Virus record (IMG/VR): IMGVR_UViG_3300012931_000759 | Coordinates: 124,001-188,000 of that record | Direction: 5' to 3' (one strand) | Length of the DNA stretch: 64,000 bases | Shown: piece by piece, positions 30,691-63,911 of the stretch | Position numbering within the stretch: position 1 is the first letter of the stretch | Layout: every line of letters starts with the position of its first letter | Notes under the pieces: model-generated | What the model was told of the DNA's origin: nothing | Databases searched by the model: none | Seen by the model: only the letters and a program-made list of their open reading frames with translations | Position numbers and translations under genes: made by a program

Positions 30691-31698
30691 ATGTCCCAGC
30701 CGATTTCGAAACGTGCCCTGAACAGGCCGCTAGCGGCCCTTGTTCATAAAATACAGCCGCTGGTCAGTGGCATGCTCATGTTCACTAAGAGGGTTGGCGG
30801 CGAGACCGAGGAGAATTTGTCCGCCCAGATGGAGACCATGCGCGGCTACCTCCTAGAGATGGGCTGCCTACTCGAAAAGCACGATTCGTTGGTCTGCCGC
30901 AGTGCCGCAGTTCCCGTCCTGGTGCGACTAGCCGATCAGCTTGACGCTATCGGCGCGCATGCGATGGCTGACGTAGCCGACGAGGCTGCCCAGCTCATCA
31001 AAACCGCCCAGGCATCCCAGGCCCCACAGCAGCAGCTCGCCCAGCAGCAACAGCAACAAACCACACTCCAGCAGCTTGCCGACAGGTTCATCAACATTCA
31101 CACCGAGATGCTCAACGCGACCCGCCTGTTCTCGAATCCGGCCACCATCCCGTCCGGTATGAAACGTCTGCTAGACGCAGCCAGGGAGATGGGTTTGGCT
31201 GCCAACGCGCTGAAACAATCCATCTCCACCACGACCACAACGACTTCTACTCCAATCCCAGCCACCACGTCCGCAGTTCCGGGGGGACCGACCACGGCTG
31301 CTGACGCCGCCAGAGAGCTTGTCGCATTGGCCAACAGGCTGGATGTCGAGGGGAACTACGTGCTCGCCGACTTGGCGGATTGCGCGGCCAAGATGGTGCT
31401 AAAGTTTTCCGACAATCGGGAGCAGGAGGAATCACCGATCAGGCCGGGTCATCTCTCTCCGCTGTCGACGCGCTATTGCCCTGATCACTGTGGCGTACAA
31501 GCTTACAGGGTAGCCGACAGGGTGTTCCAATGTCCTATAGACGGGCGCATGTACGACTACGAGGGCGGGTACGTGGATTACAGCGGACAGAGGGTTCCGG
31601 GTGGCAACATCGCCAACCAGACCCCAACAACGATGCCATACCAGCTGCCACAGCGCTTGTATGACCCGAACCAGTACGTACTGAACACGATGAATTGA
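30691..31698 (+). CDS. Hypothetical putative head protein: PISKRA N-terminus, two LAxxLDxxG tags, Q/T-rich linkers, C-terminal Cys/His domain
   Basis: Motifs visible in the translation. Confidence 0.8.
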   Translation: MSQPISKRALNRPLAALVHKIQPLVSGMLMFTKRVGGETEENLSAQMETMRGYLLEMGCLLEKHDSLVCRSAAVPVLVRLADQLDAIGAHAMADVADEAAQLIKTAQASQAPQQQLAQQQQQQTTLQQLADRFINIHTEMLNATRLFSNPATIPSGMKRLLDAAREMGLAANALKQSISTTTTTTSTPIPATTSAVPGGPTTAADAARELVALANRLDVEGNYVLADLADCAAKMVLKFSDNREQEESPIRPGHLSPLSTRYCPDHCGVQAYRVADRVFQCPIDGRMYDYEGGYVDYSGQRVPGGNIANQTPTTMPYQLPQRLYDPNQYVLNTMN

Positions 31699-31705
31699 GG
31701 AACGC

Positions 31706-32464
31706 ATGGCTTTCCCGAAAATAATGGAGCATCCGGACAAGAATCGGATCGTAAAATGGCTGCTTGAGGGCAAGGGTGTGCGCAGGGTCAGCAAGATGCT
31801 GCGCGAGATGTATCCCGACGACAAGGAGAAGCAGTTGTCGGTGCCTACGCTCCAGGATTTTAGGAAGAAGCACCTCAAGTTGGAGGGTGACGCGCTGGAG
31901 GACGTAAAGAAGGCGAAACGCCAGCATGACGGCGAGAAGACACTACAGAAGGAACACACGCAGGTTAAAAACCTGCCGACCTATAAGCAGAAGCTGAACG
32001 AAGTTGTTGATCTCCATCTCGACATCAAGAGAGGTTTGGTCGGCATGGAGAAACTGATCACAGCGCGGCTTGAGGATTTGTTCGATATGGCGGCCCGTGG
32101 CGAGGCCACGATCGACAAGGAAAAGCTGTTACAGGGCTATTTCGACCGCTATTTCATGATGATAGACAAGTGGGCCAAGTACGTGGACAAGGTGGCTGAC
32201 TTCAAGATCGAGGCAAATGTCAACGTGACGGTCATACAGGATCAGATGGCCGTCCTGAGGCAAGTTGTGTACGAGCTTCTGCGAGAGATGGACCCCGAGC
32301 TGGCCATCGGGTTCCTGGATCGGCTGAATAACCACGTGCGCACCCTGACGTACAGGCCTACCACGCCGTCAAAGGCGGCCTCGCTAGCGACCTTGCGCGA
32401 CGAAATCGCAGCGCTACCGGATGCCCAAATTATTGACGCTCCGGAGGGATACGATGCCGACTAG
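31706..32464 (+). CDS. Hypothetical helical protein with N-terminal HTH-like segment (possible terminase small subunit)
   Basis: IVKWLLEGKGVRRVSKML..LSVPTL HTH-like pattern; function inferred only from context. Confidence 0.65.
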   Translation: MAFPKIMEHPDKNRIVKWLLEGKGVRRVSKMLREMYPDDKEKQLSVPTLQDFRKKHLKLEGDALEDVKKAKRQHDGEKTLQKEHTQVKNLPTYKQKLNEVVDLHLDIKRGLVGMEKLITARLEDLFDMAARGEATIDKEKLLQGYFDRYFMMIDKWAKYVDKVADFKIEANVNVTVIQDQMAVLRQVVYELLREMDPELAIGFLDRLNNHVRTLTYRPTTPSKAASLATLRDEIAALPDAQIIDAPEGYDAD

Positions 32465-34055
32465 CTATGTCGACGACATGATGGGCGACATTTCCGGAGA
32501 CGGGATGGACGACGAGTTGCGGCAGCTAGCCGACGACGACGAGACTATGCTTGGTCGGCTTGGCGTCGGGGACGAACGCGAGCGTAACCTGGCTTTCTAT
32601 CTGGATCATTTTCTCGACGAGTTCTGCGCCGAGATGGGCATGCCAGTTCCGGACGACAGGCGGGCCGTTGTGGCTGCCGCTTTCTCCGACCTGCGAGGCG
32701 GAGCCAATGTCGGACTTGCGGACATCAGGAGCGCTCTGTACCGCGCGATGGGCGGGAAACGGTCCGTGAAAAGGGCTTATCCGAATGTCACCGGAATCAT
32801 GGAGGCGAACGTCAAGCCGCAGCGTGATGTTTCGAAGTGGGTCAGGACGCTCGGCGACATTCGCGCAGCAGAGCGCATTGGGGAGGGTGGTGACGGGGTC
32901 AAGAGAAGACTTACCGAGGAGTGGGATCCTGTGGAGAAACAGGACTTCGAGCAGTGGCTCCGCTTCTACGAGCGGGGCGATCATGAGAAATACGCCGGCA
33001 TTGAGTCAGAGGTTGCGTCTCCTATTCCAGCCGGGCAGGCCTCCCCGGTTACTCAGCATCCAGTAGTCGGCCCTCGGCGCGGTCGCCCCAAGGCGGATAC
33101 TCGCACACTAGCCGACAACCAGAAGGCCCTGATTGGGAGGCTCGATGCCGCCAAACGCCTCCTGCGTCTCTTTAGGCCGCCTATTTGGCCGCAGGAGCGC
33201 TGGTATAGCATCTACCGGGCGCTGTCGGATCTTGAGCAAGAGATTGTCAGTTTGCGCACCACAGCATCGATGCGCGATAGGATCATCAGAACCGCTGGAC
33301 TGTTGACAAGGGCTGGTTTCCGGGAGGGTGCTGATGTGCTGCTTAAGGTTGCACAGCCCCCGGACGAGGATGTGGCGAGCCAGATCGAGAAGGCGTTGAC
33401 TGGTCGCGAGTACGACATCAAGTCGCCCGGTGGCTCAGCTGAACTCCCTGGCGGGATGTCGGATATTCCGTCCACGCCCGCTCCAGAGGCGGGAGGAACA
33501 ATCCCGGTCCCTCCGGAAAGCGAATCTGCGCCTCCAGCGTCGCCAGAAGGCATGCCGCCGGAGGCCATGGGGAAACTGCCGGAACCGCCGCCACCCCCTG
33601 AGCCCGAGGCCGAAGCCGAAAAGCCTAAGCCCAAAAAGGATGAGAACCCCTACGCCGGGGCCACCACTAAGGATATCCTTGAAGTTCTTGAGCCGCTCAT
33701 GAAGAGGTTTAAGGAGCGGGAGATTGTTAGGCAGCTGTCCAAGGCGGACATGATGATGGATGCCTTGAACATCGTCTCCTATTTCCCGGAACTTGGGGAG
33801 GCCATCGGCCGCCTGATCGAGACGGACTCGTATGTTGGCACGCGGCTGGAGAAAGTCATCGGCAAGCTGCGAGGAGGCCTGAAAGAGGAGGAGGGAAAGG
33901 GCAAGAAAAAACCAGAGCCTCCTAGCATCGAGATGGGTCCGCCGCCCGAGGAGGTTGCTACCGAGGTATCCGAGAAGCCGACCGAGGAGACGGCGGTGGA
34001 GGTTGGCGAGCGTCCGACTGCGGCCCCTGAAGCGCCTGCGGCGCCTGGAGTGTGA
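32454..34055 (+). CDS. Hypothetical putative head protein with Pro/Glu-rich linkers and one helical tag
   Basis: GGAGG before ATG 32454; IIRTAGLLTRAGFREGADVLLKVA. Confidence 0.8.
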   Translation: MPTSYVDDMMGDISGDGMDDELRQLADDDETMLGRLGVGDERERNLAFYLDHFLDEFCAEMGMPVPDDRRAVVAAAFSDLRGGANVGLADIRSALYRAMGGKRSVKRAYPNVTGIMEANVKPQRDVSKWVRTLGDIRAAERIGEGGDGVKRRLTEEWDPVEKQDFEQWLRFYERGDHEKYAGIESEVASPIPAGQASPVTQHPVVGPRRGRPKADTRTLADNQKALIGRLDAAKRLLRLFRPPIWPQERWYSIYRALSDLEQEIVSLRTTASMRDRIIRTAGLLTRAGFREGADVLLKVAQPPDEDVASQIEKALTGREYDIKSPGGSAELPGGMSDIPSTPAPEAGGTIPVPPESESAPPASPEGMPPEAMGKLPEPPPPPEPEAEAEKPKPKKDENPYAGATTKDILEVLEPLMKRFKEREIVRQLSKADMMMDALNIVSYFPELGEAIGRLIETDSYVGTRLEKVIGKLRGGLKEEEGKGKKKPEPPSIEMGPPPEEVATEVSEKPTEETAVEVGERPTAAPEAPAAPGV

Positions 34056-34058
34056 GAT

Positions 34059-34885: not shown

Positions 34886-35557
34886 ATGGAGACCACCACT
34901 ACGACACCCTCTGAGGACAAAGATAAGAAAAAGGCTTCCCCGCTGGATCGTCTGCTTCGCTTGGCGACTGTCATGGAGGATGCTGGCGCGGACACGGTGG
35001 CTTTTGATTGTCAACTTGATCTCTACCTACAACGCGGCATCCAACGCAGGGCTCACGTGGTGCCTAGCAAAGAGACGAACACGCCTCCCATGTGGAGAAA
35101 GAACATGGACTACGCGCCGAAGGAGGAATCATCCTATTTCGGCAGTGTATCAGAGTTCATGAAGCGATTTCCTGGTGGAATCGCCGAGTGGAAGAAGTGG
35201 CGTGGAAAGACCCGTAAGCAGCGCGAGCGCAAGTGGCGCATTGCGTCCCTGATGCCAGGAACACAGGACGACGGCCTGGACGCTTTCCTTATGGAAGCGT
35301 GGAAGCAGGAAGAGAAGCCAGAACTGGCGCTGGCCCATTTTGTGCCCGAGGGCGGGGACGACGTTGACAAACTTGGCGGCAAAGAGCCGAAACTTTGGTC
35401 CGACGACCCCAAATGGAAGAGCATCGGGGAGTTCTTGGAGGCGCACAGCGAGCATTTCGGCCAGGACGCTGACGATGCGGCCCTTAGGGCCGCGCGTGAC
35501 TTTGTGAAGTACTGGAAGCTCACAACTAAGAAGTCCAAGGGGTCGAAGGGTAAATGA
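34886..35557 (+). CDS. Hypothetical protein with degenerate helical tag
   Basis: GAGG before ATG 34886; LLRLATVMEDAG. Confidence 0.7.
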   Translation: METTTTTPSEDKDKKKASPLDRLLRLATVMEDAGADTVAFDCQLDLYLQRGIQRRAHVVPSKETNTPPMWRKNMDYAPKEESSYFGSVSEFMKRFPGGIAEWKKWRGKTRKQRERKWRIASLMPGTQDDGLDAFLMEAWKQEEKPELALAHFVPEGGDDVDKLGGKEPKLWSDDPKWKSIGEFLEAHSEHFGQDADDAALRAARDFVKYWKLTTKKSKGSKGK

Positions 35558-37487: not shown

Positions 37488-38168
37488 ATGGTTTTCGGCA
37501 GGGAATACGAGATAGCCAGACCGTCTGCCGTACCGGAGTGGCTGCGCGAGTTTGCTGAAAGCGCGTTACGCCGATCGGCCGACGGCTCGAATCCGTTCCA
37601 GGAACTTAAGAGCTTATTCCAGAGGAATAAGGATCTTGGCGCCATCGAGGAGCGTGTCCGCGAATTGAAGGACCGGATCGGCTTGAGTTTACTTGCGGGA
37701 CACGAGGCCGACCATCCCCCTGTTAAGACGGCCTCTGTAGCTTTCCGGCCGGACATGGCGAGGTTGGTTCGCTTGGCCAATTGGCTCGACAAGTGTGGTC
37801 TCGAAAACGAGGCGCGGGACGTGGATAATATGATCTGCGTGCGGGCCGCCCAGGCAAAGGCAGACGGTGTGTTTGCCAAATACCCTAAACTGAAGTCTTT
37901 CTTGGACAATGTGATCCGGTCGCGCGGTGGCCACGTGACGGTGCCCGCCCTCCTAAAGATGGTGAGGGACGAACGTCCCGATGAGAGTGTGGCGGCCTCC
38001 GACGAGTCGCTGAGGGAGTACGTGGAGAGCATGATCCGCAGCGAGAAGCGCGAGGTGGGCGACGCCAGCGACAGCCTTGCTGGTTTTGGTGTGGGGCTCT
38101 CCGTGCCCGAGGTTGATCTCCAGGAAGACAACAAAATGTTCGAGCCAGCAAAACCAGCCAACAGATAG
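37488..38168 (+). CDS. Hypothetical protein with helical tag
   Basis: GAGGTGGGA before ATG 37488; VKTA then LVRLANWLDKCGLENEARDVD. Confidence 0.75.
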   Translation: MVFGREYEIARPSAVPEWLREFAESALRRSADGSNPFQELKSLFQRNKDLGAIEERVRELKDRIGLSLLAGHEADHPPVKTASVAFRPDMARLVRLANWLDKCGLENEARDVDNMICVRAAQAKADGVFAKYPKLKSFLDNVIRSRGGHVTVPALLKMVRDERPDESVAASDESLREYVESMIRSEKREVGDASDSLAGFGVGLSVPEVDLQEDNKMFEPAKPANR

Positions 38169-38171: not shown

Positions 38172-38348
38172 ATGATAGTGCCGAACACGCGGCGCCTAAA
38201 ACGCTTCGCGGTGATATACAAGGGAAGATCTTGCGGCCCGACCACGTCGTGGCCGCAAACCATTTGGTTTGATAAGGAGGAGGAGTACGATGAGGCGGTT
38301 CGCAAGCTGAAGACGCTGGTCGTGGATCTGAATGCCAATGCCGATTAG
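38172..38348 (+). CDS. Small 58-aa hypothetical protein (below the ORF-track cutoff)
   Basis: ATG 38172 to TAG 38348 fills the gap before the terminase (MIVPNTRRLKRF...). Confidence 0.4.
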   Translation: MIVPNTRRLKRFAVIYKGRSCGPTTSWPQTIWFDKEEEYDEAVRKLKTLVVDLNANAD

Positions 38349-40182
38349 GACAATTAACACCAGCCGTTGGGCTCCGGAGAACAGCTTCGAAGAGCTGAAG
38401 GCCGAACTGATGAAAGTCGATCCGGTCTATTTCGCCGAGTCATACCTGACGCTCGACGGAAATCCGATGAAGCTGACGGGCAATGGATGGAAGTTCATCG
38501 CCGACATCTACCGCTACATCATGTCCAAGGCGGTGTCGCCCGACGGCAAACCGATCGTCATCGTCAAGGGTCGCCAGGTCGGCGCCACAACGATGGCCTC
38601 GGCGCTGGAATTACACATGGTCGCCAGTGGTGTGTTTGGGCAGGGCGGAGCCAGGCCTATCCGCGTCATGCATGCTTTCCCACAGTTGGAGCTGATGCAT
38701 GCCTTCTCCAAGGACAAGCTGGAGAAAATGGTTCGTGAGTCGGCGATGGTTCCGGATCCGGATGATCCGCGGCACCAGATGAGGCCTTTCGTCGAGACTA
38801 TGAAAGATGCCTCGCGTGAGGCTTCCGACAGCCTGACCTACAAACAGTTCAAGCACGGCAACACCCTGTGGTGTGATTCCATAGGAAATGAGGGGGTTAG
38901 GGTGCGCGGCCGTACCATCGATGCCATCTTTTTCGACGAGGCCCAGCTCATGACGAAGCAGGCGGTCGACACGGCGGTCAAGTGTACCACGCGAGCCCAG
39001 TATGGTCCACAGCCTGGCGGCATCCAGGTCTACTTCGGCACCCCGGAGCATAAGAACTCTCACTTCTACGAAATGTGGGAAAACTCCGACCAACGCCGGT
39101 ATTACCTCGGCTGCGCTGAATGCCACCGCTACTTCCTTCTATACACTCCTGGCTCCGATAAGTGGGAGAAGGACATCTGGCTATACGAGAATGTGGTGAA
39201 ATGTCCTAACTGCGGTCACGAGCAGGACAAGGTAGAAGCAATCGAGCGCGGCAAATGGCTCCCTGCCCCCGGTAAAGAGGACGCTAAGATCGTCGGTTTC
39301 CACTTCAACCAACTCTTTATTCCGGAGTTTACGAAGGAAAAGATCCTCAATGAGAGCCCGGCGTATAACCCGATGAAGAGGGAGGTGGACTGGAACAATG
39401 AGGTGCTTGGCGAGTTTCACACGGGAACCGGCCTACCAATCACCCGCGAGGAGATCTATAAAACCTGCCGGGACCCTATGCGCACGATGGCCAAGCATAT
39501 CACCAAAGACGAGCGAAAGATGGTGTACATGGGTATCGACTGGGGAGGTAAGCCGGATATCGACGACGTAAAGACCCGTGGACAGTCCTTCTCCTGCGCA
39601 GTTGTGATCTCGGTAGAACACGACGGCCGGGTGTTGATAGAGTTCGCCCAGAAGTTAAAGAAGCTAGACCTACAGTCCAAGATGCAGTTTGTCGAGGAAA
39701 TGATGCGCCTGTACAACGTGCGGATGGTCGGGGCGGACATTGGGTATGCCGAGGACATTTCGGGTGAACTGAAAGCACGCCTAGGCGACCGCTTCAAGAC
39801 AGTGCGGAACTCCGCCCAGGTTCTCAGTGGCACCAAGTACCGGGAGGACGAGTTGGAGATCGTCATTGACAAGGATAAGTGGATTGGCGATATGTTCAAT
39901 CTGCTGCGTCGCGGCGGCGTTCGTTTCCCGTGGGGAAGCTACGAGCGCGTGGCCTGGCTGGTAGACCATTGCTGCTCCATGGAGAGCAAGCAGACCATCC
40001 GCGCGGGCATGCCGCATACCATGTTTGTCAAGGGGAAAACACACAACGACGGGCTGATGGCGCTCATTTACGCCTATGTCGCATACAAGTTCGAGCAGAC
40101 GCATGGCTTCAAGGCCACGCCTGGCAATGCGGTCGCGAAGTCGGTGAAGCCGGTCCTGGCGTTCGTTCCGCGCATGAGATGA
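38332..40182 (+). CDS. terL: Terminase large subunit (lambda GpA-like, with Zn-binding cysteines)
   Basis: IVKGRQVGAT Walker A, IFFDE Walker B, GTP coupling motif, CAEC/CPNC, GFHFNQL, MGIDWG nuclease motif. Confidence 0.9.
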   Translation: MPMPIRTINTSRWAPENSFEELKAELMKVDPVYFAESYLTLDGNPMKLTGNGWKFIADIYRYIMSKAVSPDGKPIVIVKGRQVGATTMASALELHMVASGVFGQGGARPIRVMHAFPQLELMHAFSKDKLEKMVRESAMVPDPDDPRHQMRPFVETMKDASREASDSLTYKQFKHGNTLWCDSIGNEGVRVRGRTIDAIFFDEAQLMTKQAVDTAVKCTTRAQYGPQPGGIQVYFGTPEHKNSHFYEMWENSDQRRYYLGCAECHRYFLLYTPGSDKWEKDIWLYENVVKCPNCGHEQDKVEAIERGKWLPAPGKEDAKIVGFHFNQLFIPEFTKEKILNESPAYNPMKREVDWNNEVLGEFHTGTGLPITREEIYKTCRDPMRTMAKHITKDERKMVYMGIDWGGKPDIDDVKTRGQSFSCAVVISVEHDGRVLIEFAQKLKKLDLQSKMQFVEEMMRLYNVRMVGADIGYAEDISGELKARLGDRFKTVRNSAQVLSGTKYREDELEIVIDKDKWIGDMFNLLRRGGVRFPWGSYERVAWLVDHCCSMESKQTIRAGMPHTMFVKGKTHNDGLMALIYAYVAYKFEQTHGFKATPGNAVAKSVKPVLAFVPRMR

Positions 40183-40194: not shown

Positions 40195-43100
40195 ATGGTT
40201 GACCAGAGCAGGCGGGCAACGGGGCGGACACCAGGACCGAAGGTCCTACGAACATCTCCCAAGCTAGCCAATGTGTTGTCGCCAATTCGGCGCGGAGCGC
40301 TACAGGACGAGGTTGAGAATGGCATAGTCAGGGAGGGCGCACAGTACGGCGGTAGTATGCTGCGTCGAGGAATTGCCGAACCTATGCCTGCGGATCTCGA
40401 CAAAGGTCTTGCTCGCGGAGTGTGGATGGAGGGGGGTCGGCCAACCAGCGGGAAGAAAGCTGCAGAGGGCAGCCAGGCCCTGATCGCGCACAGCCCATCC
40501 TTCAGAAAACAGGCCGCCGTGGGCGTGATGAATGGCGGTGTCGGCAGTACGGCCGGCGCGCCGGTGGAGCGCCTGGCGCCCGAGGTGTATTCGCCATTGT
40601 TCGTGATGGCGAACCTAAACCTGCCGCGTGATCGCATCACGGTGAATGCGTGGTGTTTTCTTCCAGGAACAATGGTGTGGATGGCCGACGGGACACGTAA
40701 GCCTATCGAGGAAATCTGTGTCGGAGACATGGTCCTGTCTGGCGAGGGTTTGCCGCGCCGAGTCACAACCGTGTTTCGGCGACATGTGGACGAGGAGATT
40801 GTTGGTCTCCGTGTCAAAAACTCGCAGGAAACTGTGTGGTGTACTACAAATCACGGCTTCAATGCCGTCAAGGCTGATGCTGTCCGCTGCCACGATAAAA
40901 CGACGTTTGTAAAATGTAAGCCGGACGGGGATGGATGTTTTTGTTCCCGTTGCGGGCGTAAAGATGACCCATATGTGTTCGGGAAAGTGGAGTCCGGACA
41001 ACTTGGAGAAAGAGACATTCTCTATATGCCGGTGCCCAAACTAGAACCGGTTTCGAATGATCCATTGTTGAGCAATCCCGAAGCCATAGAACTTCTTGGC
41101 TATTATGCCGCCGAAGGCTTCGTCGCACACAATAGGGTGACTTTCTCGCTGGGCAGTCATGAGAAGCAGTTGGCTGTTAGGATTGAGGAATTGGTCGGCA
41201 AACTGTTTGCTGAAGGTCAAATCCATACGCGATCAGACAGGTCGACGGAAATCTATGTGGATTGTTCCAATGCCAAATTGGCTGCTTTTGTTTTGCGGCA
41301 CTGCGGACAAGGCTCCCTGACAAAACGCCTGTCGTTCGAATTGATGTCGGTTGAGCCCGGATTGCTGCTGCGGTTCCTGGTTGCCTGGCTGGACGGGGAC
41401 GGTGGACAGGAAAAGTATAATTCGGGCATTTTTGTTGGCAACACTTCCTCCGAGAACCTAGCCTGGCAAATGCGAATGTTGTGTTTGCGCTGCGGCCTGG
41501 TGGCACATGTGTTCCGGGCCCATAGCCAGAAAACTATGGTTTCACCAACCAACGGGGAAACATATCCCGCTGCTCCTCGCTACTATGTTAAGATTCGTGG
41601 CAAATCAGCACTAAAACTGGCGGAATGTTTTTCGTCTGAGTTTTATAGGTTTGCCGCCATCGAACGCTCATATGAGCGCGACGGCTGCTGTTTTATCCAC
41701 AAAGACAAAGCGATCCAGTGGATCAACACCGTGAAGAGGTCAGGCTACATAGGGTTCGTCCACAATATCGAGGTTGAAATTGACCACACCTATGTGGTTG
41801 GATATGGTGTAAGTGTTCGAAATTGCAGGAATTTTTTTGATTTGCACCCGCTTGTGCGCAACGCGATCACGATGCATGCGACCTATCCGATCTCCAAGAT
41901 CAGCATCAGGTGCCAGGACAAGAAGGTTCAGCAGTTCTTCGAGGACATGATCGAGGAGATGGACCTGCTCGGGGCGCTCGGGGATATCTCACTGGAGTAT
42001 TGGAAGCTCGGTGAGGCTTTCCCTTACGCGGAGCTTGACGAGAACACGCTGAAGTGGAAGAGGATCGTCGTTCAGAACCCGGACTACATCCACGTCAAGA
42101 AGATGGTGATCGCCAGCGAGCCGGTTATCTCACTGCGTCCGGATGCCGTACTACAGCGGCTCGTCATGAGCAACAACCCAGCCGACGTCCAGCTGCGCAA
42201 GCAGATCCCGCAGCACATTGTGTACCACGTGCGCCGCGGGGAGAATATTCCCTTGGACAATTTTAACGTCAGCCACCTAAAGATGTTGTCAAGCCCGTAC
42301 GATGTGCGCGGCACCAGCGTCATTGTGGCAGCCTTCAAAGACCTGATGCTTTATGACAAAATTAGGGAATGTTTCTCAATAGATAGCGAAATCATGACCG
42401 AAAGGGGCTTCAAAACTTATGACGAGATCAAGGAGGATGACAGGCTTGCCACTTTCAACCCGGCCACTGGGATAATGGAGTTCCAACCATATACAGCTCG
42501 CATCAAAAGGCGACATGACGGGGATATGTGCCATTTTCATGGCAAGAAGGTGGATGTTCTAGTAACGCCCAACCATCGCATGTGGCTCGCTCAAAGTAGA
42601 TCGCATGGGGGCGGATATCACGATTTCGGCATTATCGAGGCCCAGGATGTTAAGAAGGGCTATTTCTACAAGTTGCGATGCGTTGCCGACTGGGTGGGCA
42701 AGGAACTGAAGACAATTTCGGTTCTCGGGCACGAAATGCCAGCCGAAACCTATATGAGAATCCTTGGGCACCTAGTAGCCGAAGGATGTATCCACTACAA
42801 GAATATCAACAACTATAAGTACAAAGTTGGCATAAGCCAAAACCTTGACCAGAATGAATTGATTTTCGGTCATATTTGCCAATCTATGGTTGATCTTGCT
42901 CGGTTTTGTGGGAAACATCTTGGAACATATGACCATAGGAATACCAAGGGGTTTTCGGTCAACAAGCCATCCGAGATGAGGAATTGGACAATTTCCAGCA
43001 AGGAACTCGCTGCCCATTTTGCCGCCGAGATTGGTACAAACAGTCACGACAAGCATCTGCCGCGCTGGGTGTTCGACTTGTCCCCGCGCCTGTTGCGTAT

Positions 43101-44907: not shown

Positions 44908-46081
44908 GGAAATAACATTTGCCAAGATCGCCGCTATGGCGCAGCTGCTGGACGATCACGGGCTACACGACGACGCCACAGTTATGGATGAAGTGCTGGA
45001 GGCGGCCGCGTTTCCCGGCATCCTCAAGGAGGCAGGATTGTGGAAGAACATCTTGTCCAGGCTGAGCGGCTGGGCGCGTAAGGTCCTTTTTAGTGAGTAT
45101 CGCGAGATGTACGATATGGCTGAGGAGGCCCAGAACGCACTCGATGAGCGCATCGAGGCACTCCAGGATGCCAACAAGGAACTCAAGGCCATGCTGTCGC
45201 GTCACGAGCTTCCCGAATGGCGCAAGAATATTGCTACCATCATCGCTGGTGTCGGCGAGAATGCGGATGAGGTCATGTCCGACTATGATTCGCTCCACGC
45301 GAAGATGACGGCGCGTCTGCTGAAGCTCGCCCCGGCGGCCAAAAAGAGGGAAAAGAAGCCAACAACGCCCGCGCTGCTACCGAAAGAGGAGGGGGAAAAG
45401 GAGGAGCCCAAGTCCCCAGAGAAGGCCATAGAAGAGACCTTAGTTCCCGAAAAACCGGCCGAGCCAACCAGCATCCCGGAGGAGCCGATTCCCCTGACCG
45501 AGGTCAAAAAGAAGCCGACGCCGGAAGCGCCCCCGGAGCCTGCGCCAGCCCCGAAGCCAACTCTCGCTCCGGTAGCTCCGCTACCCAACTGGAAAAAAGA
45601 GAGGTTCGGCACTAGCGGCAAACATGGCTGGGAATGGGAATGGGAAGTGTCACCTGACAACAACCAGCTGCGCCTTCTGAAGAGCCAGCTGGCTGCTGCC
45701 TCCAGCGGCAAGGGGAAGGTCCTACATAGGCATGGGGATAAGTACCGCCCGACCGGTGGCACGTCCAGCATTAAGCTGCGTAAACTCATGGGCGGCACGT
45801 TTTGGGAGATGGACGACGACCCCTCTGATCCAAACATGGTGATCCTGACGCGTACGGAAGAGGTTGTACCTTTTCCGCTGTCGATGCGCCAGGAGCCGGT
45901 CGAACAGGCCAAGAAGCTTAAGGAGCTCGGCAAGTCTTCCAAAGAGCGGATGAACCGACTTGTGACCATTGCTGTCGGCAGATCGGCCGGGGAAGAGATG
46001 AGCGAGGAGGAGAAGCTCGACGTGGCCGCCGAGGCTCTGCTCGAGGGTTTCGAATCCGAGGAGACCGAGGAGGAAATTTAG
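44900..46081 (+). CDS. Hypothetical putative head protein with N-terminal helical tag
   Basis: AKIAAMAQLLDDHGLHDDATVMD..LKEA; Pro/Glu/Lys-rich linker; acidic tail. Confidence 0.8.
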   Translation: MNREITFAKIAAMAQLLDDHGLHDDATVMDEVLEAAAFPGILKEAGLWKNILSRLSGWARKVLFSEYREMYDMAEEAQNALDERIEALQDANKELKAMLSRHELPEWRKNIATIIAGVGENADEVMSDYDSLHAKMTARLLKLAPAAKKREKKPTTPALLPKEEGEKEEPKSPEKAIEETLVPEKPAEPTSIPEEPIPLTEVKKKPTPEAPPEPAPAPKPTLAPVAPLPNWKKERFGTSGKHGWEWEWEVSPDNNQLRLLKSQLAAASSGKGKVLHRHGDKYRPTGGTSSIKLRKLMGGTFWEMDDDPSDPNMVILTRTEEVVPFPLSMRQEPVEQAKKLKELGKSSKERMNRLVTIAVGRSAGEEMSEEEKLDVAAEALLEGFESEETEEEI

Positions 46082-56873: not shown

Positions 56874-57581
56874 ATGGAGAAGCAGGCTAACATAGTCAAG
56901 ATCGCCTTCATCCGCAAAGTGAAAGGTAAGGGATGGTGCGTTTTTGCCCACCGCAAAACCAAAAGCGGAAAACGCCAGAATTTCGGATGCTACAAATCGA
57001 AGGCGGCCGCGAAAAAACGCCTTGGTCAGATCTATTTCTTCAAGGGTCGCGGAGCTTTGGATGGCATGATCGGCATTGCGGATGACTTGGATCGCAGGGG
57101 ACTTCTCCATTTCGCGGACGCCCTGATGGATAGTCTGGAGCAGATCGTGGCTGCCAGCCTAGGCGAGATATCTGAGCGCCCGGTCTCCGTGACCATCGGC
57201 AAGATCGCCTCACTGCTGGAGAAAAAGGGCGAGGCAGCGCTCGCAGAGCGGCTGGACAGTCTTCTGCCAGCCGTGCTGGATGTGGAGTGTGGCGGAGTTG
57301 ACTGCCCCGACTGCCCGGACATGGTGGTCGAGGCCGATCTCGGCCGCTGCGGCGGCATCACTAGGCAGGTGTCCGCCGACAAGCTGTATGCGATGGCGGC
57401 CCGCTGCCGCCAGATGTACCGCGAGGGCATGATAGACGAGAACAGCTTCGAATACAGGAAGTTCCGTGAGCTGCGCTATATGCTGCGCACTGGTTTCCTG
57501 TTCCCGCCCCCTGAGGGACAGGGCGTCCCAAAGGACGCCGCGAACTGGTGGGACCATTTCGAGAAGGAGGCGGGCGAATGA
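56874..57581 (+). CDS. Hypothetical putative head protein with basic N-terminal module and two helical tags
   Basis: EKQA/VKIA; IRK..GWCVF..NFGCY..AKKRL.QI.FFK; IADDLDRRG, IASLLEKKG. Confidence 0.8.
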   Translation: MEKQANIVKIAFIRKVKGKGWCVFAHRKTKSGKRQNFGCYKSKAAAKKRLGQIYFFKGRGALDGMIGIADDLDRRGLLHFADALMDSLEQIVAASLGEISERPVSVTIGKIASLLEKKGEAALAERLDSLLPAVLDVECGGVDCPDCPDMVVEADLGRCGGITRQVSADKLYAMAARCRQMYREGMIDENSFEYRKFRELRYMLRTGFLFPPPEGQGVPKDAANWWDHFEKEAGE

Positions 57582-59016: not shown

Positions 59017-60137
59017 ACCTGCGCCAGAGGTTATTGGTCCTGCGCCCCGCCATGGCGGCGGCCGCCCAGAAGGTGGTCGACGAGTGGCAGCTGGACGAGG
59101 AGGGGCTTGATCCGGAGCTGGGCGCGGGCGGGATCTGCGACCGCGTGGCCGACGCCATCACCGACACGCTGTACTCCCATCTCGGCGATGTCGAGGTGGC
59201 GCTTGGCGCTCCGGAGGGCGAGGACCACCAGTGGGTTGTTGTGAGTGACGGGAAGGAGGCCTTTGTGGTCGACATCCCGCCAGGCGCGTACGAAACCGGC
59301 GGCGGCTACGCCTGGACAAAGATCGAAGGCGCCCGGATCGAACCAAGTGATGTGTTCGTAGGCCCGATCGACCTAGAACTAGCGCAAGACCTTCTCAAGG
59401 AGGGTGGACGGATGCATAGACTCGTTGTCCTGGCCGAGGCGCTCGAGGCGCTCGGCGAAGCGAACAGTGCCGCGCTCGCGCGCGTGCTGGCGGTCCCCGA
59501 ACTCGTCAGCGAGGCACAGGGCTGGGCTGATCGGTTTTTTAAGGCGAATCCCGAACTACTGGACAGGGCTGAGCAATTCGCTGAGGCCAAGGGTATCTCA
59601 GTCGGGCAATATCTCGGCCATCTTGAGCAGCTTCCGGAGGATATCGGCCGCAAAAAGGTCCATCAGGATCTCGGTTATGTCGGAATGGGCGCGGCGTGGT
59701 CCCCGACCGGTAAACCGACCGCAAAACCGGAGCCTAAGCCGGAGAAGCCGGAGCCGAAACTACAGCCGGAGACCGAACTCCGGTGGCCGTTCCCGCCGCC
59801 GAATGTCCTCCAGGACAGAAAGGCCTTCATTGCCGCCGCCCTCGGATGGGCGATGGGCGAGGGCAGGGACCTCTACGGGCGCATGTACGGTTCGCAGGGG
59901 CTGCGCGACACGGGCAGGAAGGGGGAGGTGGGGGCTGCGCGCGCCTATCTGCGATACCTCATGAAGGATGTGGCGCCGCGCCTGGCCGCCACCCTGCAGG
60001 CCAAATGGAAGGAGGCCTCGACCAAGGGCGACACGGAGGCGCAGCGCACGCTGAGAGCCTGGTGGTCGTCGCTGTCGGACGTGTGGGAGCTGATCCAGGA
60101 TATGGTCGGCAACATCAACGAATATTCTATGGAATAG
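59013..60137 (+). CDS. Two-module hypothetical protein; N-terminal module has a possible papain/transglutaminase-like C-H-D triad
   Basis: GGICD..HQWVV..VVDI; second module starts at an internal AAGGAGG..ATG (59412). Confidence 0.7.
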   Translation: MNLRQRLLVLRPAMAAAAQKVVDEWQLDEEGLDPELGAGGICDRVADAITDTLYSHLGDVEVALGAPEGEDHQWVVVSDGKEAFVVDIPPGAYETGGGYAWTKIEGARIEPSDVFVGPIDLELAQDLLKEGGRMHRLVVLAEALEALGEANSAALARVLAVPELVSEAQGWADRFFKANPELLDRAEQFAEAKGISVGQYLGHLEQLPEDIGRKKVHQDLGYVGMGAAWSPTGKPTAKPEPKPEKPEPKLQPETELRWPFPPPNVLQDRKAFIAAALGWAMGEGRDLYGRMYGSQGLRDTGRKGEVGAARAYLRYLMKDVAPRLAATLQAKWKEASTKGDTEAQRTLRAWWSSLSDVWELIQDMVGNINEYSME

Positions 60138-60815: not shown

Positions 60816-60818
60816 GCC

Positions 60819-61202
60819 ATGGCGACTCCACCGCTCTCCAAGAGGAGCAATTCCACACCGCTGCTTCCCATCTCGAAGCGGGCGCAGGATCCCGTGCGCC
60901 GCACGGCTGAGTCCATCCTGAAGATCATCACCTTCATCCTTTTCCGCGTGGCGCCGAAAGACAAGACACGATACCTACAGCGTATTAGAGGAAAAATACT
61001 AAGGATTCCAACAGGGCAAGTGAGTCTGAAAAAGTTGCCGCAAACAGCGGCCATTGGACAAGCTATCAGTTTGACCAAAAACATCTTGTCCGGTTTGAAC
61101 CCCTTCTTTGTCAAAAGAGTGGTGGACGAACTGGCGAACCTTATGCTTCTACAGGTGCCCGTTCGCCAGACTCTACCAATCCAGCGACCTAGGGTCCAAT
61201 GA
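60819..61202 (+). CDS. Small basic hypothetical protein with tandem PLSKRS/PISKRA N-terminal motifs
   Basis: MATPPLSKRSNSTPLLPISKRA; GGAGG upstream. Confidence 0.75.
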   Translation: MATPPLSKRSNSTPLLPISKRAQDPVRRTAESILKIITFILFRVAPKDKTRYLQRIRGKILRIPTGQVSLKKLPQTAAIGQAISLTKNILSGLNPFFVKRVVDELANLMLLQVPVRQTLPIQRPRVQ

Positions 61203-61855: not shown

Positions 61856-63345
61856 TTCCCCTCAGCAAACGCGCGATCCAGGTCGTCATCGAGCCGCTTG
61901 ATCCTGCGGTCCAGCAGGCTGTGACGCGCATCAATGCGCGCGACCCTGCTCTTCTTGCGCGTGTCCACAAGATTGTGGTACACCCAGGTGGCGGAGCCGA
62001 GTTGGGTCATGTTCAATCCGGAAAAGGACATGATCCGCAGGAGATCCACCTTTTCAAGGGGCGCATAGAGCAGATGGTTCGTCAGCAGACCAGCGCCACC
62101 GGCGTGAAGCCAACCCCGACGGATTTCGCCCAGGCTTTGGAACAGGCAATAGTGGAAGTAATCGGCCATGAGGCCGGGCACATCGGGCCGGAGCGGCCGA
62201 TTGTGCCGGGAGCGCAGCCTTTCCTTGGGGAACCGGAGGCTGAGACGAAGGCCAAGGAGACCGTCCGGAGGATCTATCCCGGAGCCGTCGCGCACGCGGC
62301 CATCGAACTGGACGACATCAGACGGAAATTCATGCCAGATGCCCCCATGGGCGAGCCGGATCTGGCCTTTGTGGCAAAGGTTGCCGCCGGAAACGGCGCT
62401 GGCGCCCTGCGCGACGGGTTGAGGATCTTGCGCCACGGCAGCGTGCCTGTGGCTTTGGCTATGGGACAGGCCTGCGTGTTCAACAGCCAGGTCGCGCGTC
62501 GCACGGATGTGGCCAGGAAGTTGGGCTTCCTAGTGAGCCTGTTTGGGGCGCTGCCGAACTCCAACGATTTCGCGATGGCGCTTGCCGCCTGCCAAACGGA
62601 CAACGGCCTCGAGCCGACAGGGAAGCTCGACCGTCCAACCATAGCGCACCTGCGCGCCCGCATGGCGCCCTCCGAGGAGTTCCCGCGCAACTTCGGCATG
62701 GTGGCCGAGGGACTGTATCGCGGAAGGCAGCCCGACAGCATCGGGCAGCTCGCGGCCCTGCGCGACAGGCTGGGCGTCCGCCGCGTTGTGACGCTGAACG
62801 ACGACGGCCCACCGATCGCCGACTGGTGCCGCCAGCTGGGCCTGGGGCACCTCCACGCGATGCTGTCGTCCGGCGCTCCCCAGGAGCCCGGATGGCAGGT
62901 TTTCGGCCCCGAGCTGTCGGATTTCCTGCTTGAGACCCCCACATTCGTCCATTGCCGCCATGGAGCCGACCGGACGGGCGGCGTCGTGGCGCGGTGCCGC
63001 ACCGAGATGGGTTGGCCCTGCGACCTGGCATACGCCGAAGCCAAAGCCTTCGGTTTCAAGGACCGTTTCCCCGACATGGTCGACCGGTTTACCGACGCCT
63101 GCGGACACGACCCGCACGGGCACCGGCACCCGCCCATCGACACCGCCCTGATCCGCCGCATCATGGGGGCGGAGCTTGCCGCCAACGCCCCGCGTCCTTC
63201 GGTCGAGCAGGATCTGCTCGAGCCCACCCCGTTTGACCTCCACTACACCACCGACAACAACAGCTACGAGAGTGGGATCGATACGATCCTGTCGCCATAT
63301 TCCATCATGTCTATTCCGACAGGTTTTCCGGGGGCGGGGAGATGA
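61852..63345 (+). CDS. Mosaic protein: HExxH module + peptidoglycan-binding-like helix pair + tyrosine/dual-specificity phosphatase
   Basis: PLSKRA N-terminus; IGHEAGH; CQTDNGLEPTGKLD..T; LYRG.QP, FVHCRHGADRTG (CX5R). Confidence 0.8.
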   Translation: MIPLSKRAIQVVIEPLDPAVQQAVTRINARDPALLARVHKIVVHPGGGAELGHVQSGKGHDPQEIHLFKGRIEQMVRQQTSATGVKPTPTDFAQALEQAIVEVIGHEAGHIGPERPIVPGAQPFLGEPEAETKAKETVRRIYPGAVAHAAIELDDIRRKFMPDAPMGEPDLAFVAKVAAGNGAGALRDGLRILRHGSVPVALAMGQACVFNSQVARRTDVARKLGFLVSLFGALPNSNDFAMALAACQTDNGLEPTGKLDRPTIAHLRARMAPSEEFPRNFGMVAEGLYRGRQPDSIGQLAALRDRLGVRRVVTLNDDGPPIADWCRQLGLGHLHAMLSSGAPQEPGWQVFGPELSDFLLETPTFVHCRHGADRTGGVVARCRTEMGWPCDLAYAEAKAFGFKDRFPDMVDRFTDACGHDPHGHRHPPIDTALIRRIMGAELAANAPRPSVEQDLLEPTPFDLHYTTDNNSYESGIDTILSPYSIMSIPTGFPGAGR

Positions 63346-63911
63346 GTTGTGAACTGACCCTCCTTGTACACCTAGCCGACGAGTTGGACAGGCGCGGAAT
63401 GCTCTGGGAAGCTGATGAGGTCGACCACATAGTGCGCTTGGCTGTCGGCGGGCCGGATGTAAGGGACTGGTTGCGCCGCCAGTATGAGCGTCTGCGCCGA
63501 CTCTTTTCCAGGAAAAAGACTGATCCAGGTGCCGCGAAGACGTACGACGCCGCTGCGGCGAACCGTCTGGATGACATGTTGCGTCGCAAACAGAGTGGCC
63601 CGCCGGATGAGCGCGTGTTTCTCTGGTTTTGCCAGCAGTTCCCGAATTCCTGTCCAGCTTGTCGCGGCCGACACGGCCGCATGCGAACCATGCGCCAATG
63701 GCGCGGGGAAGGCCTGCCAGGCCCCATGGTCTGTGAAAAGGACGATTGCGCGTGCCACCTTGTGCCGCTGCTGCCAGGAGGTGTTGCCCAGATGGATGAG
63801 GATGGCGACATCATGGCGAACATTACCGGCCTCCAGGAGGACAGCTCTGGCCACAGCATGAATCAAGGATTTGCTCTCGAGCCCTTCTTCAGCGACACAA
63901 CAACTAGTTGA
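63342..63911 (+). CDS. Helical-tag protein with MuF/gp7-like Cys-rich C-terminal module
   Basis: LADELDRRG..EADEVD; CPAC..RHG..W...GLPG...C..DC.C.L.P. Confidence 0.65.
   Translation: MSCELTLLVHLADELDRRGMLWEADEVDHIVRLAVGGPDVRDWLRRQYERLRRLFSRKKTDPGAAKTYDAAAANRLDDMLRRKQSGPPDERVFLWFCQQFPNSCPACRGRHGRMRTMRQWRGEGLPGPMVCEKDDCACHLVPLLPGGVAQMDEDGDIMANITGLQEDSSGHSMNQGFALEPFFSDTTTS

What the first reader, a model, noticed from the sequence alone, without database searches (positions are those of the whole stretch)
30919..63425. Repeated ~21-aa helical tag [LI]xx[LIMT]Axx[LM][DE]xxGxxxxA[DE]xxD
Copies seen: LVRLADQLDAIGAHAMADVAD (~30919), LVALANRLDVEGNYVLADLAD (~31318), IIRTAGLLTRAGFREGADVL (~33282), LLRLATVMEDAGADTVAFD (~34952, weak), LVRLANWLDKCGLENEARDVD (~37764), IAAMAQLLDDHGLHDDATVMD (~44927), MIGIADDLDRRGLLHFADALMD (~57066), IGKIASLLEKKGEAALAERLD (~57195), LVVLAEALEALGEANSAALA (~59421, weak) and LVHLADELDRRGMLWEADEVD (~63363). 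The host proteins share nothing else obvious, the DNA is not repeated, and a [KR]-x-A often flanks the tag. Inference: a helix-turn-helix hairpin that docks on a scaffold or capsid, or mediates co-assembly.
Basis: partly seen in the sequence, partly recalled or inferred. Interest (0 to 1): 0.82.

Follow-up and report, generated by a model that had tools for sequence, protein, structure and literature searches.

The report
Portable helical-hairpin tag of huge phages
A real, roughly 30-residue helix-turn-helix module, absent from the curated family libraries searched, is attached to many unrelated proteins of an uncultured huge-phage lineage and clusters in the head-assembly genes, so it most likely docks proteins onto a shared assembly; that function is inferred, not shown.

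Summary
All ten copies are at the stated coordinates. Seven are robust by profile search. Three are weak but keep the A-x6-G-x4-A core.

A strict pattern occurs 10 times in 101 kb of this contig, against 0.004 expected. Every copy is on the coding strand.

The window belongs to a 340-kb wetland huge-phage contig. Over the 101 kb examined, all 11 significant copies lie in the head-morphogenesis block, between the replication genes and the major capsid gene. None lies outside it.

The module is widespread. 1137 cluster representatives match at E<=0.001 in a 1.84-billion-protein library. Hits are dense in viral contigs. In 596 Gb of cellular genomes, true copies were found only on five short MAG contigs.

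No Pfam, PHROG, NCBIfam or PDB entry covers it.

About 60% of copies start at the protein's first residues. Runs of 5-10 neighbouring, mutually unrelated genes all carry it.

AlphaFold2 folds a natural tandem pair into two hairpins (pLDDT 88). The nearest folds are TPR proteins, but not significantly.

Best reading: a portable TPR/LisH-like docking hairpin, probably recruiting proteins to the prohead scaffold or core. Fold and tag behaviour are supported. Partner and destination are inferred.

The parts
30919..30993 (+). Hairpin copy 1 in gene 30691-31698 (family D, 335 aa, residues 77-101)
   Evidence: Profile hit of 28.5 bits. Leave-one-out 18.2 bits, best non-member. An orthologous copy is present in L015.
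31318..31392 (+). Hairpin copy 2 in gene 30691-31698 (family D, residues 210-234)
   Evidence: Profile hit of 27.8 bits. Family D is the most widespread host: 65 of the 145 best library hits. It has a conserved C-terminal CPDH...CPxDG domain.
33282..33341 (+). Probable divergent copy in gene 32421-34055 (544 aa)
   Evidence: Below the profile threshold (0.9 bits). It keeps A-x6-G-x4-A. Counterparts occur in relatives L016, L004, L014 and L013.
34952..35008 (+). Possible divergent copy in gene 34826-35557 (243 aa)
   Evidence: Matches the relaxed core pattern only. Profile score is -1.2 bits. No orthologue support was found. This is the weakest of the ten.
37764..37838 (+). Hairpin in family U gene, true extent 37488-38168 (226 aa), directly upstream of the large terminase
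   Evidence: 34.8 bits. The gene start is fixed by an exact database match and 27 homologues. The hairpin is invariant at A97/G104/A109/D113 across 26 homologues. AlphaFold2 places it as helices 88-102 and 106-131 at the head of a helical C-terminal domain.
38332..40182 (+). Large terminase subunit (context)
   Evidence: Pfam GpA_ATPase 5.8e-19; PHROG 675 9.2e-58.
40195..44451 (+). Portal protein interrupted by intein-like elements (context)
   Evidence: PHROG 16240 portal 1.6e-45; Hint and LAGLIDADG domains.
44927..45001 (+). N-terminal hairpin (residues 10-34) of family P gene 44900-46081 (393 aa), directly downstream of the portal
   Evidence: 27.0 bits. The same N-terminal copy is present in the post-portal gene of 12 related loci. 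No named family matches.
57066..57140 (+). Hairpin copy 1 in gene 56874-57581 (235 aa)
   Evidence: 24.9 bits. Orthologue in L021.
57195..57269 (+). Hairpin copy 2 in gene 56874-57581
   Evidence: 19.8 bits, the lowest accepted member. Orthologue copy in L021 scores 11.0 bits.
59421..59480 (+). Probable divergent copy in gene 59013-60137 (374 aa)
   Evidence: 6.0-8.1 bits. The core is kept. A conserved counterpart occurs in L021.
63363..63437 (+). N-terminal hairpin (residues 8-32) of gene 63342-63911 (189 aa)
   Evidence: 31.1 bits. Leave-one-out 17.6 bits. The rest of the protein has Phage_Mu_F-like leads only.

Best explanation
The motif is a lineage-specific protein module of about 30 residues. 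Its consensus is M-[IL]-[KE]-[EK]-L-[IV]-K-L-A-[ND]-x-L-D-x-[KR]-G-x-x-K-E-A-[DN]-x-[ILV]-D-x-x-[ILV]-K-K-x-A.

It folds as a helix-turn-helix hairpin. Ala9, Gly16 and Ala21 form the tight inter-helix contact. Their spacing is the same as TPR positions 8, 15 and 20.

It behaves as a portable tag. It usually sits at the extreme N-terminus and usually occurs once per protein, on dozens of unrelated proteins.

Proposed mechanism (inferred): one hairpin packs against a second one to form a four-helix unit. This happens in cis in two-copy proteins, and in trans (homo- or heterotypically) in single-copy proteins. The pairing recruits different proteins into one shared assembly.

In this phage that assembly is most likely the interior of the prohead, meaning the scaffold or core built around the portal. 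This would be functionally comparable to the hairpin domains of the P22 and phi29 scaffolding proteins and to the T4 capsid-targeting sequence.

Shown: the module is real, virus-restricted and tag-like, and it is predicted to be a hairpin that packs in cis. Inferred: pairing in trans and the prohead destination.
For: **Reality and conservation**
- 34 copies separate cleanly from background in the window and 14 related loci, all on the coding strand.
- A9, G16 and A21 are invariant, and D25 is at least 90% conserved.
- 1137 cluster representatives match at E<=0.001 among 1.84 billion proteins.

**Virus restriction**
- The DNA pattern gives 104 stretches in IMG/VR, many on contigs of 100-440 kb.
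- It gives 9 stretches in 596 Gb of GTDB genomes. Five are true and all lie on MAG contigs of at most 8.4 kb.
- tblastn of two hairpin-bearing proteins found nothing in GenBank phages.

**Tag behaviour**
- 98 of 148 copies lie within 40 codons of the upstream stop, and 90 have a Met just before them.
- 127 of 137 ORFs carry a single copy.
- The best 145 proteins fall into 53 families once the motif is masked.
- L019 has 9-10 neighbouring tagged genes and L098 has 5. Their tag-less remainders share no similarity.
- L098 tags are 81-87% identical in DNA on unrelated genes.

**Fold**
- AlphaFold2 of a natural tandem pair gives pLDDT 88 and pTM 0.72, with four helices forming two hairpins.
- The top Foldseek hits are TPR proteins.

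**Head context**
- In 101 kb of this contig, all 11 significant copies lie between window-equivalent 30,910 and 77,269.
- They lie in the genes directly flanking the large terminase and the portal, in a gene with Mu F-like leads, in a 1216-aa protein with a lysozyme-like domain, and in genes next to a protease-like gene.
- The block ends just before the major capsid gene.
- 52 of 80 motif-selected IMG/VR loci carry homologues of these head-block genes.

**Precedent**
- P22 scaffold hairpin on coat and portal (PMC12005531); T4 capsid-targeting sequence (PMC5694885).
Against: - No partner was identified, and no multimer prediction, proteomics or expression data were available.
- One tagged protein (P0050) lies next to helicase, UDG and thymidine kinase genes, so tags are not confined to head modules.
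- Family U sits where a small terminase would be. A small terminase is not packaged.
- In the family U model, the hairpin is part of a larger helical domain rather than a free tag.
- The two giant enzyme fusions inside the head block (46084-49980 and 50026-55344) carry no hairpin.
- The conserved residues can all be explained by hairpin stability. They do not point to a binding surface.
- Only about 30% of the contig was examined.
- The motif-selected loci were found with a pattern derived from this clade. Their head-block enrichment partly reflects that families D, U and P are the conserved hosts.
Confidence: 0.42

Rival explanations
1. The hairpin is a plain self-association motif, like LisH. 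It dimerises whichever protein carries it by forming a four-helix bundle. There is no common destination and no link to the capsid.
For: - It is N-terminal, about 30 residues long and helix-turn-helix, as LisH is.
- Weak LisH matches: 15.4 bits against a 21.6 cutoff, and LisH_WDR26 at E 0.06.
- Two hairpins are predicted to pack together in cis.
- Most proteins have a single copy.
- Tags occur outside head modules.
Against: - It does not explain why all copies in 101 kb of this contig fall in the head block.
- It does not explain why whole runs of unrelated neighbouring genes share near-identical tags.
- The LisH matches are below the family cutoffs.
Confidence: 0.25
2. The hairpin docks cargo onto another hub. 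Candidates are a phage replication or translation factory, a phage-built compartment, or a host structure.
For: - In L019, my reading of the sequences suggests a ParB-like nuclease, a 2H-phosphoesterase-like protein and a possible acetyltransferase among the tagged proteins. No family search was run on them.
- P0050 lies in a replication and nucleotide-metabolism neighbourhood.
Against: - No hub candidate was found.
- In the window's contig the replication module (window 1-30 kb plus 9.5 kb upstream) has no copy.
- The conserved hosts flank the large terminase and the portal.
Confidence: 0.15
3. The motif is an ordinary TPR/Sel1-type repeat, or a chance family of amphipathic helices with no specific meaning.
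For: - The small-residue spacing equals TPR positions 8, 15 and 20.
- The profile picks up a few TPR-like cellular repeat proteins at low per-repeat scores (P0021, P0045, P0056, P0059, P0129).
- The top Foldseek hits are TPR proteins.
Against: - No Pfam TPR or Sel1 model matches tag-only peptides, even at E<=10.
- Copies are single, not tandem arrays.
- 10 observed against 0.004 expected.
- The motif is strongly virus-restricted.
- Asp13 and Asp25 are conserved, which TPR repeats lack.
Confidence: 0.03
4. The conserved 5' gene ends reflect a nucleic-acid signal, such as a shared translation-initiation or regulatory element, rather than a protein module.
For: In L098 the tags of neighbouring genes are 81-87% identical in DNA, and most copies sit at gene starts.
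Against: - In the window the copies share only 43% nucleotide identity while keeping the residue pattern.
- A third of copies are internal or C-terminal.
- The invariant positions are amino acids with a structural rationale.
Confidence: 0.02

Closest known systems
Coat/portal-binding helix-turn-helix of phage scaffolding proteins (P22 gp8 C-terminal domain; phi29 gp7)
   Same: Both are a short helix-turn-helix hairpin at one end of an otherwise extended protein encoded in the head module. In P22 the hairpin or hook anchors the scaffold to coat and portal inside the procapsid (PMC12005531). Family P here has the hairpin at its N-terminus and is encoded right after the portal.
   Different: No sequence similarity was found. 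The known hairpins occur in one protein per phage. This one is on at least nine proteins in one genome and on dozens of families across the lineage. Binding to coat or portal is untested.
T4 capsid-targeting sequence and the N-terminal propeptides of giant-phage head proteins (SPN3US/phiKZ group)
   Same: Both are an N-terminal element shared by otherwise unrelated proteins, and in T4 it is sufficient to bring them into the prohead core (PMC5694885). Here about 60% of copies are at the first residues, and a protease-like gene lies in the same block.
   Different: The T4 sequence is 10-20 residues, is not a conserved folded hairpin, and is removed by the prohead protease. Here no consistent cleavage motif follows the tag (reading). 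A third of copies are internal.
Tetratricopeptide (TPR) / Sel1 repeats
   Same: Both are a helix-turn-helix with small residues at the helix-packing positions. A9/G16/A21 match TPR 8/15/20 (TPR consensus is from general knowledge). TPR proteins are the top structural neighbours.
   Different: No TPR or Sel1 profile match. Copies are single rather than arrays of three or more. The conserved Asp13 and Asp25 are absent from TPR repeats. Foldseek E-values are not significant (>=0.26).
LisH dimerisation motif
   Same: Both are about 30 residues, typically N-terminal, two helices joined at a Gly, on many unrelated proteins. LisH forms a four-helix dimer (general knowledge). Weak profile matches were seen.
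   Different: The matches are below the Pfam cutoff. The Gly and Ala register is shifted by one residue. LisH is eukaryotic. Dimerisation is untested here.
NCBIfam TIGR02996 (repeat-companion domain of Gemmata and Myxococcus proteins)
   Same: A similar stretch [YL]-A-[DN]-W-L-[ED]-x-x-G occurs in the family U copies.
   Different: There was a single 12-residue match of 11.7 bits against a cutoff of 29.05, in one related copy only.

Membership tests
TPR repeat (Pfam clan TPR) | Match to a curated TPR/Sel1 profile | tested here: not met
   Pfam scan of six tag-only proteins and four window hairpin peptides at E<=10 found no TPR or Sel1 family. 136 hairpin proteins scanned at E<=0.001 gave none.
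TPR repeat (Pfam clan TPR) | Small residues at helix-packing positions 8 and 20 (and Gly at 15) | tested here: met
   A9, G16 and A21 are invariant in 34 copies. The spacing, 7 and 5, is the same as TPR 8/15/20. The TPR consensus is taken from general knowledge.
TPR repeat (Pfam clan TPR) | Tandem arrays, usually three or more repeats forming a superhelix | tested here: not met
   127 of 137 ORFs in the pattern-selected sample have one copy, 9 have two and 1 has three.
TPR repeat (Pfam clan TPR) | TPR-like three-dimensional fold | tested here: inconclusive
   The top PDB and BFVD neighbours of the tandem-pair model are TPR/Sel1 proteins, but E>=0.26 and TM<=0.51.
LisH motif | Match to the Pfam LisH profile above its cutoff | tested here: not met
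   Best match 15.4 bits against a cutoff of 21.6. LisH_WDR26 scored 13.2 against 27.
LisH motif | Mediates homodimerisation through a four-helix bundle | not testable with these tools
   Only monomer prediction was available. Cis packing of two hairpins is predicted.
T4-type capsid-targeting sequence | N-terminal location on unrelated head-internal proteins | tested here: inconclusive
   About 60% of copies are N-terminal. In the window only 2 of 7 robust copies are N-terminal. Whether the hosts are head-internal is unknown.
T4-type capsid-targeting sequence | Removed by the prohead protease after assembly | not testable with these tools
   A protease-like domain is encoded 1.7 kb beyond the window. 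No consistent cleavage motif was seen after the tags. Mature N-termini would need proteomics.
Scaffolding-protein coat-binding hairpin (P22 gp8 type) | Helix-turn-helix at the end of a scaffold protein | tested here: inconclusive
   The hairpin fold is predicted. Family P has the gene position and, by my reading of its sequence, the composition of a scaffold. No family, PDB or fold match confirms it.
Scaffolding-protein coat-binding hairpin (P22 gp8 type) | Binds the inner surface of the coat shell and/or the portal | not testable with these tools
   This needs multimer prediction or binding assays.
NCBIfam TIGR02996 | Profile match above the curated cutoff | tested here: not met
   11.7 bits against 29.05, in one related copy only.

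The most novel reading that the evidence does not exclude
The hairpin is a general cargo-loading tag of a large uncultured huge-phage lineage. Any protein carrying it is recruited by hairpin-hairpin pairing into the prohead core and delivered to the next host with the DNA. Candidates include nucleases, phosphoesterases, cell-wall hydrolases and Mu F-like proteins. The runs of tagged genes would then be a modular arsenal of injected effectors. They would be diversified by moving the tag-coding 5' end between genes.
Probability: 0.25. Interest if true: 0.85.

Novelty: new variant of a known kind. Interest (0 to 1): 0.64.

Why it matters
Huge phages are known almost only from metagenomes, and most of their proteins have no annotation. 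This module would give a handle on hundreds to thousands of such proteins: at least 1137 clusters, in at least 53 host families among the best 145 hits.

If it is a docking or loading tag, it defines which proteins travel or assemble together. That would make capsid-interior composition and injected effectors predictable from sequence in an uncultured lineage.

It could also offer a short, transferable tag for loading foreign proteins into phage-derived particles, as the T4 targeting sequence does.

At minimum it is a clean, uncurated domain family worth a Pfam entry. It is also a marker for mis-binned phage contigs in MAGs.

Tried and rejected
- **Family libraries.** Pfam, PHROGs and NCBIfam scans of the host proteins gave nothing above cutoffs.
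- **TIGR02996.** A resemblance I recalled from memory gave only 11.7 bits, so it was rejected as membership.
- **Solved structures.** PDB sequence searches found nothing meaningful with the motif profile, the family U profile, the family D C-terminal domain or the protease-like protein.
- **Family U.** The AlphaFold2 model (pLDDT 71, pTM 0.39) had no significant Foldseek neighbour. Whether U is the small terminase stays open.
- **ESM Atlas.** It gave only a Phage_Mu_F lead for gene 63342-63911, and nothing for family P or the tandem pair.
- **GenBank phages.** No close relative exists (large terminase at most 25% identical). tblastn with two hairpin proteins found no copy.
- **Names and domains.** Homologue searches for families U and P and for gene 28833-30560 returned only unnamed metagenomic proteins without Pfam domains.
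- **Cleavage site.** I looked for a protease cleavage motif after the tag, such as [LIV]-x-E. Some family P copies fit and most others do not, so I make no claim.
- **Literature.** Searches found analogies but no description of this motif.
- **Sequencing runs.** Only wetland DNA runs hold the sequence and no RNA run was shown to, so read mapping was not attempted.

Full report
**Where the window comes from.** The window is part of IMGVR_UViG_3300012931_000759, a 340,392-bp viral contig. Window position 1 corresponds to about contig position 124,001. Two wetland metagenome runs hold the sequence.

All genes are on the + strand. The first 30 kb is a replication and nucleotide-metabolism block:
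- an SbcC-like ATPase at 5071-7191;
- a DnaE-type polymerase at 14842-18294;
- a UDP-glucose dehydrogenase with an intein at 24971-27799.

The large terminase is at 38332-40182. A portal gene interrupted by intein-like elements is at 40195-44451.

No GenBank phage is close. The best large-terminase identity is about 25%, and there was no nucleotide match. IMG/VR holds relatives on contigs of 161, 302 and 442 kb, with large terminase 62-83% identical. This is an uncultured huge phage.

A profile was built from the seven clear copies. It was then iterated over the six-frame translations of the window and 14 related loci. It converged on 34 copies scoring 19.8-36.6 bits. The next hit scored 10.2 bits, and all 34 were on the coding strand.

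Leave-one-out tests using the window alone recovered five of the seven as the best non-member. Copies 44927 and 57195 needed the relatives to become significant.

In the 34-copy alignment, Ala9, Gly16 and Ala21 are invariant and Asp25 is nearly so.

I stitched 101 kb of the contig from fetched pieces. In it:
- A strict residue pattern occurs 10 times in the + strand proteome. Residue shuffles predict 0.004, and the minus frames have none.
- A relaxed core without the acidic residues occurs 14 times against 0.14 expected.

The three weak copies are therefore probably diverged members. Copies 33282 and 59421 also have conserved counterparts in relatives. Copy 34952 has none and is the least secure. 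The relaxed pattern was loosened after I had seen the weak copies, so this is supporting evidence only.

- The copies are not DNA repeats. Mean identity is 43% and the longest exact run is 8 nt.
- With hairpins masked, the window's host proteins share no similarity.
- A K-K-x-A ending is moderately common.

**How widespread is it?** The 34-copy profile was searched against one representative per 50% cluster of about 15 billion proteins. It found 1137 proteins at E<=0.001 and 59 at E<=1e-10.

The broad consensus is M-[IL]-[KE]-[EK]-L-[IV]-K-L-A-[ND]-x-L-D-x-[KR]-G-x-x-K-E-A-[DN]-x-[ILV]-D-x-x-[ILV]-K-K-x-A.

Five of the top 150 are cellular-looking repeat proteins, with many low-scoring TPR-like units. 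The other 145 carry one to three sharp copies.

Of 136 proteins scanned, almost none has any Pfam or PHROG family. The ten looked up have no informative name. No PDB sequence carries the motif; the best match is a designed helical repeat at E 0.034.

I back-translated the motif into a degenerate DNA pattern.
- In IMG/VR it hit 104 stretches, many on contigs of 100-440 kb and several more than once per contig.
- In 596 Gb of GTDB genomes it hit 9 stretches. Five are true copies, all on MAG contigs of 1.5-8.4 kb. The other four, on larger contigs, fail the profile.

That test is not met.

**Tag-like behaviour.** In the pattern-selected sample, 148 validated copies were found.
- 98 lie within 40 codons of the upstream in-frame stop, and 75 lie within 15.
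- 90 have a Met within a few residues upstream.
- 127 of 137 ORFs carry a single copy.

Among the best 145 library proteins, 83 have a copy in the first ten residues. After masking the motif they fall into 53 families.

Two loci are striking:
- L019 has nine to ten consecutive genes that each start with the tag.
- L098 has five such genes.

The remainders of these proteins show no mutual similarity. From my reading of the L019 sequences, they appear to include a ParB-like nuclease, a 2H-phosphoesterase-like protein and membrane proteins. No family search was run on them, apart from a precomputed DUF1232 hit on one.

Three L098 tags are 81-87% identical in DNA although their genes are unrelated. 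This suggests the tag-coding 5' end moves between genes.

**Fold.** Several small proteins consist of little more than two adjacent copies. AlphaFold2 on one of them (P0039 residues 1-76, 12-sequence alignment) gave pLDDT 88 and pTM 0.72. It has four helices, at 5-18, 22-39, 43-55 and 59-75, which form two hairpins in one compact unit.

The top Foldseek neighbours in the PDB and in viral models are TPR and Sel1 proteins. None is significant: E>=0.26 and TM<=0.51.

The spacing of the invariant small residues (7 and 5) equals that of TPR positions 8, 15 and 20. The TPR consensus here is from general knowledge.

No TPR or Sel1 Pfam model matches tag-only peptides, even at E<=10. The weak sub-threshold matches are LisH, LisH_WDR26 and the TPR-like chaperone YscG.

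I therefore describe it as a TPR/LisH-like hairpin, and I do not file it in either family.

In the window's family U protein, AlphaFold2 gave pLDDT 71 with a 26-sequence alignment. The hairpin forms helices 88-102 and 106-131, at the start of a helical C-terminal domain with pLDDT 80-88.

**Genomic context.** Three host families are conserved near the large terminase in relatives:
- Family U lies directly upstream of the large terminase. Its true gene is 37488-38168, as fixed.
- Family P lies directly downstream of the portal and has the hairpin at its N-terminus. By my reading of its sequence, a helical, heptad-like stretch and a Pro/Glu/Lys-rich linker follow. That looks scaffold-like, but it is only an inference.
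- Family D (30691-31698) has two copies and a conserved C-terminal CPDH...CPxDG domain. It accounts for 65 of the 145 best library hits.

Walking downstream of the window found the following, in window-equivalent coordinates:
- a 1326-aa protein with a head-maturation-protease-like domain, at 65,622-69,602;
- a 263-aa protein with one copy;
- a 1216-aa protein with an N-terminal lysozyme-like domain and two copies, at 72,201-75,851;
- a paralogous 435-aa protein with one copy;
- the major capsid protein at 79,147-80,172 (PHROG 2522, E 3e-76).

Over the 101 kb examined, all 11 significant copies lie between 30,910 and 77,269. None lies in the 40 kb upstream (replication block) or in the 14 kb after them, which includes the capsid gene.

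Of the 80 IMG/VR loci fetched through the motif pattern alone, 52 carry homologues of this block. The counts are large terminase 26, portal 22, genes 28833-37477 18-27 each, and protease-like 15.

There is a counter-example. P0050 has hairpins at both ends and lies beside helicase, UDG and thymidine kinase genes.

**Most likely mechanism.**

Shown:
- The module is real, conserved and virus-restricted.
- It is predicted with high confidence to be a helical hairpin that packs against a second hairpin in cis.
- It is distributed like a portable tag, and in this genome it is concentrated in the head block.

Inferred:
- Single-copy hairpins pair in trans, with themselves or with other tagged proteins, and so gather different proteins into one assembly.
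- In this phage that assembly is the prohead scaffold or core around the portal.

The inference rests on the gene neighbourhood and on the hosts. It also rests on precedent: the P22 scaffold hairpin that anchors to coat and portal (PMC12005531), and the T4 capsid-targeting sequence shared by unrelated internal proteins (PMC5694885).

My confidence by step:
| Claim | Confidence |
|---|---|
| Real module | about 0.95 |
| Hairpin fold | about 0.85 |
| Protein-docking tag | about 0.7 |
| Prohead destination | about 0.35-0.4 |

**Rivals.**
- A plain LisH-like dimerisation motif fits the size, position and cis packing. It does not explain the clustering in the head block or the runs of tagged neighbours.
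- Docking to another hub fits the enzyme cargos and the P0050 context. No hub candidate was found, and the replication block here has no copy.
- A generic TPR repeat or chance amphipathic helix is excluded by the statistics, the single-copy architecture and the virus restriction.
- A nucleic-acid signal at gene starts is unlikely. The window copies keep the residue pattern at 43% nucleotide identity, and a third of copies are internal.

**Novelty and value.** The kind of thing is known: a short helical docking or targeting module. This family is not in Pfam, PHROGs, NCBIfam or the PDB, and I found no paper describing it.

It is large, sharply defined and specific to an uncultured huge-phage lineage. 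I rate it a new variant of a known kind, with moderately high interest.

The decisive work is multimer prediction, biophysics of the hairpin, tag-dependent loading into procapsid-like particles, and viral-fraction proteomics.

Noticed in passing
window 40195-44451: The portal gene is 1418 aa. It carries Hint and LAGLIDADG domains, plus stretches matching thymidylate-synthase and PhoH PHROGs. It probably contains one or more inteins with homing endonucleases.
   Followed up: no
window 24971-27799: The UDP-glucose/GDP-mannose dehydrogenase is split by an intein with a LAGLIDADG domain. The N-terminal and central domains are at residues 36-319 and the C-terminal domain is at 834-929.
   Followed up: no
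window 46084-49980 and 50026-55344: Two giant fusion proteins lie inside the head block. One is 1298 aa: an ATP-dependent DNA ligase domain plus about 900 unassigned residues. The other is 1772 aa: DJ-1/PfpI, LigD 3'-phosphoesterase and 2H phosphoesterase domains. Neither has the hairpin. In several relatives the protease-like gene follows the portal within about 15 kb, so this stretch may be an insertion.
   Followed up: partly
window 55668-61855: This is a cluster of homing-endonuclease-like genes interleaved with hairpin genes. It includes a DUF4379 zinc-finger/HNH gene (55668-56864), a NUMOD3 plus Vsr/DUF559 gene (58150-59016), a GIY-YIG plus NUMOD3 gene (60141-60815) and an HNH gene (61199-61855).
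   Followed up: no
window 57548-58153; L011:3445-4293: A DUF5661 domain is present in gene 57548-58153. A similar segment appears as an insertion between the N-domain and the hairpin of the family U orthologue in L011. Other U orthologues carry different insertions at the same point, so it looks like a hotspot for domain insertion.
   Followed up: partly
window 36569-37477 and 37242-38168: The mechanical ORF 37242-38168 overlaps the preceding gene. Homologues show that the real gene starts at 37488 (226 aa).
   Followed up: yes
window 63342-63911: Beyond its N-terminal hairpin, this 189-aa protein has a Cys-rich C-terminal part. Its ESM Atlas neighbours include Phage_Mu_F head-morphogenesis families. 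This is a lead only; Pfam gave no hit.
   Followed up: partly
window 31381-31695 (family D C-terminus): This C-terminal domain of about 100 residues is strongly conserved. Its invariant residues are C-x2-H ... C-P-x-D and a Q-T-P ... D motif. It has no match in Pfam or the PDB.
   Followed up: partly
L098:1903-4780; L019:4762-11903: These are runs of neighbouring, mutually unrelated genes that all begin with the tag. In L098 three tags are 81-87% identical in DNA. This suggests recent copying of the tag-coding 5' end between genes.
   Followed up: partly
L027, L029, L031, L033, L035 (GTDB MAG contigs); P0224: True hairpin copies occur on short contigs binned into Rickettsiaceae, Eubacteriales, Flavobacteriales and Methylococcus MAGs. 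A homologue of gene 28833-30560 on a 243-kb contig is labelled Patescibacteria. These are probably phage contigs binned with bacteria.
   Followed up: no
window 28833-37477: A block of genes upstream of the large terminase is conserved with it across many IMG/VR relatives. It comprises a 555-aa protein, family D, a 252-aa and a 544-aa protein, a PolyA_pol-type nucleotidyltransferase at 34059-34829, and two more genes. Most have no known family.
   Followed up: partly
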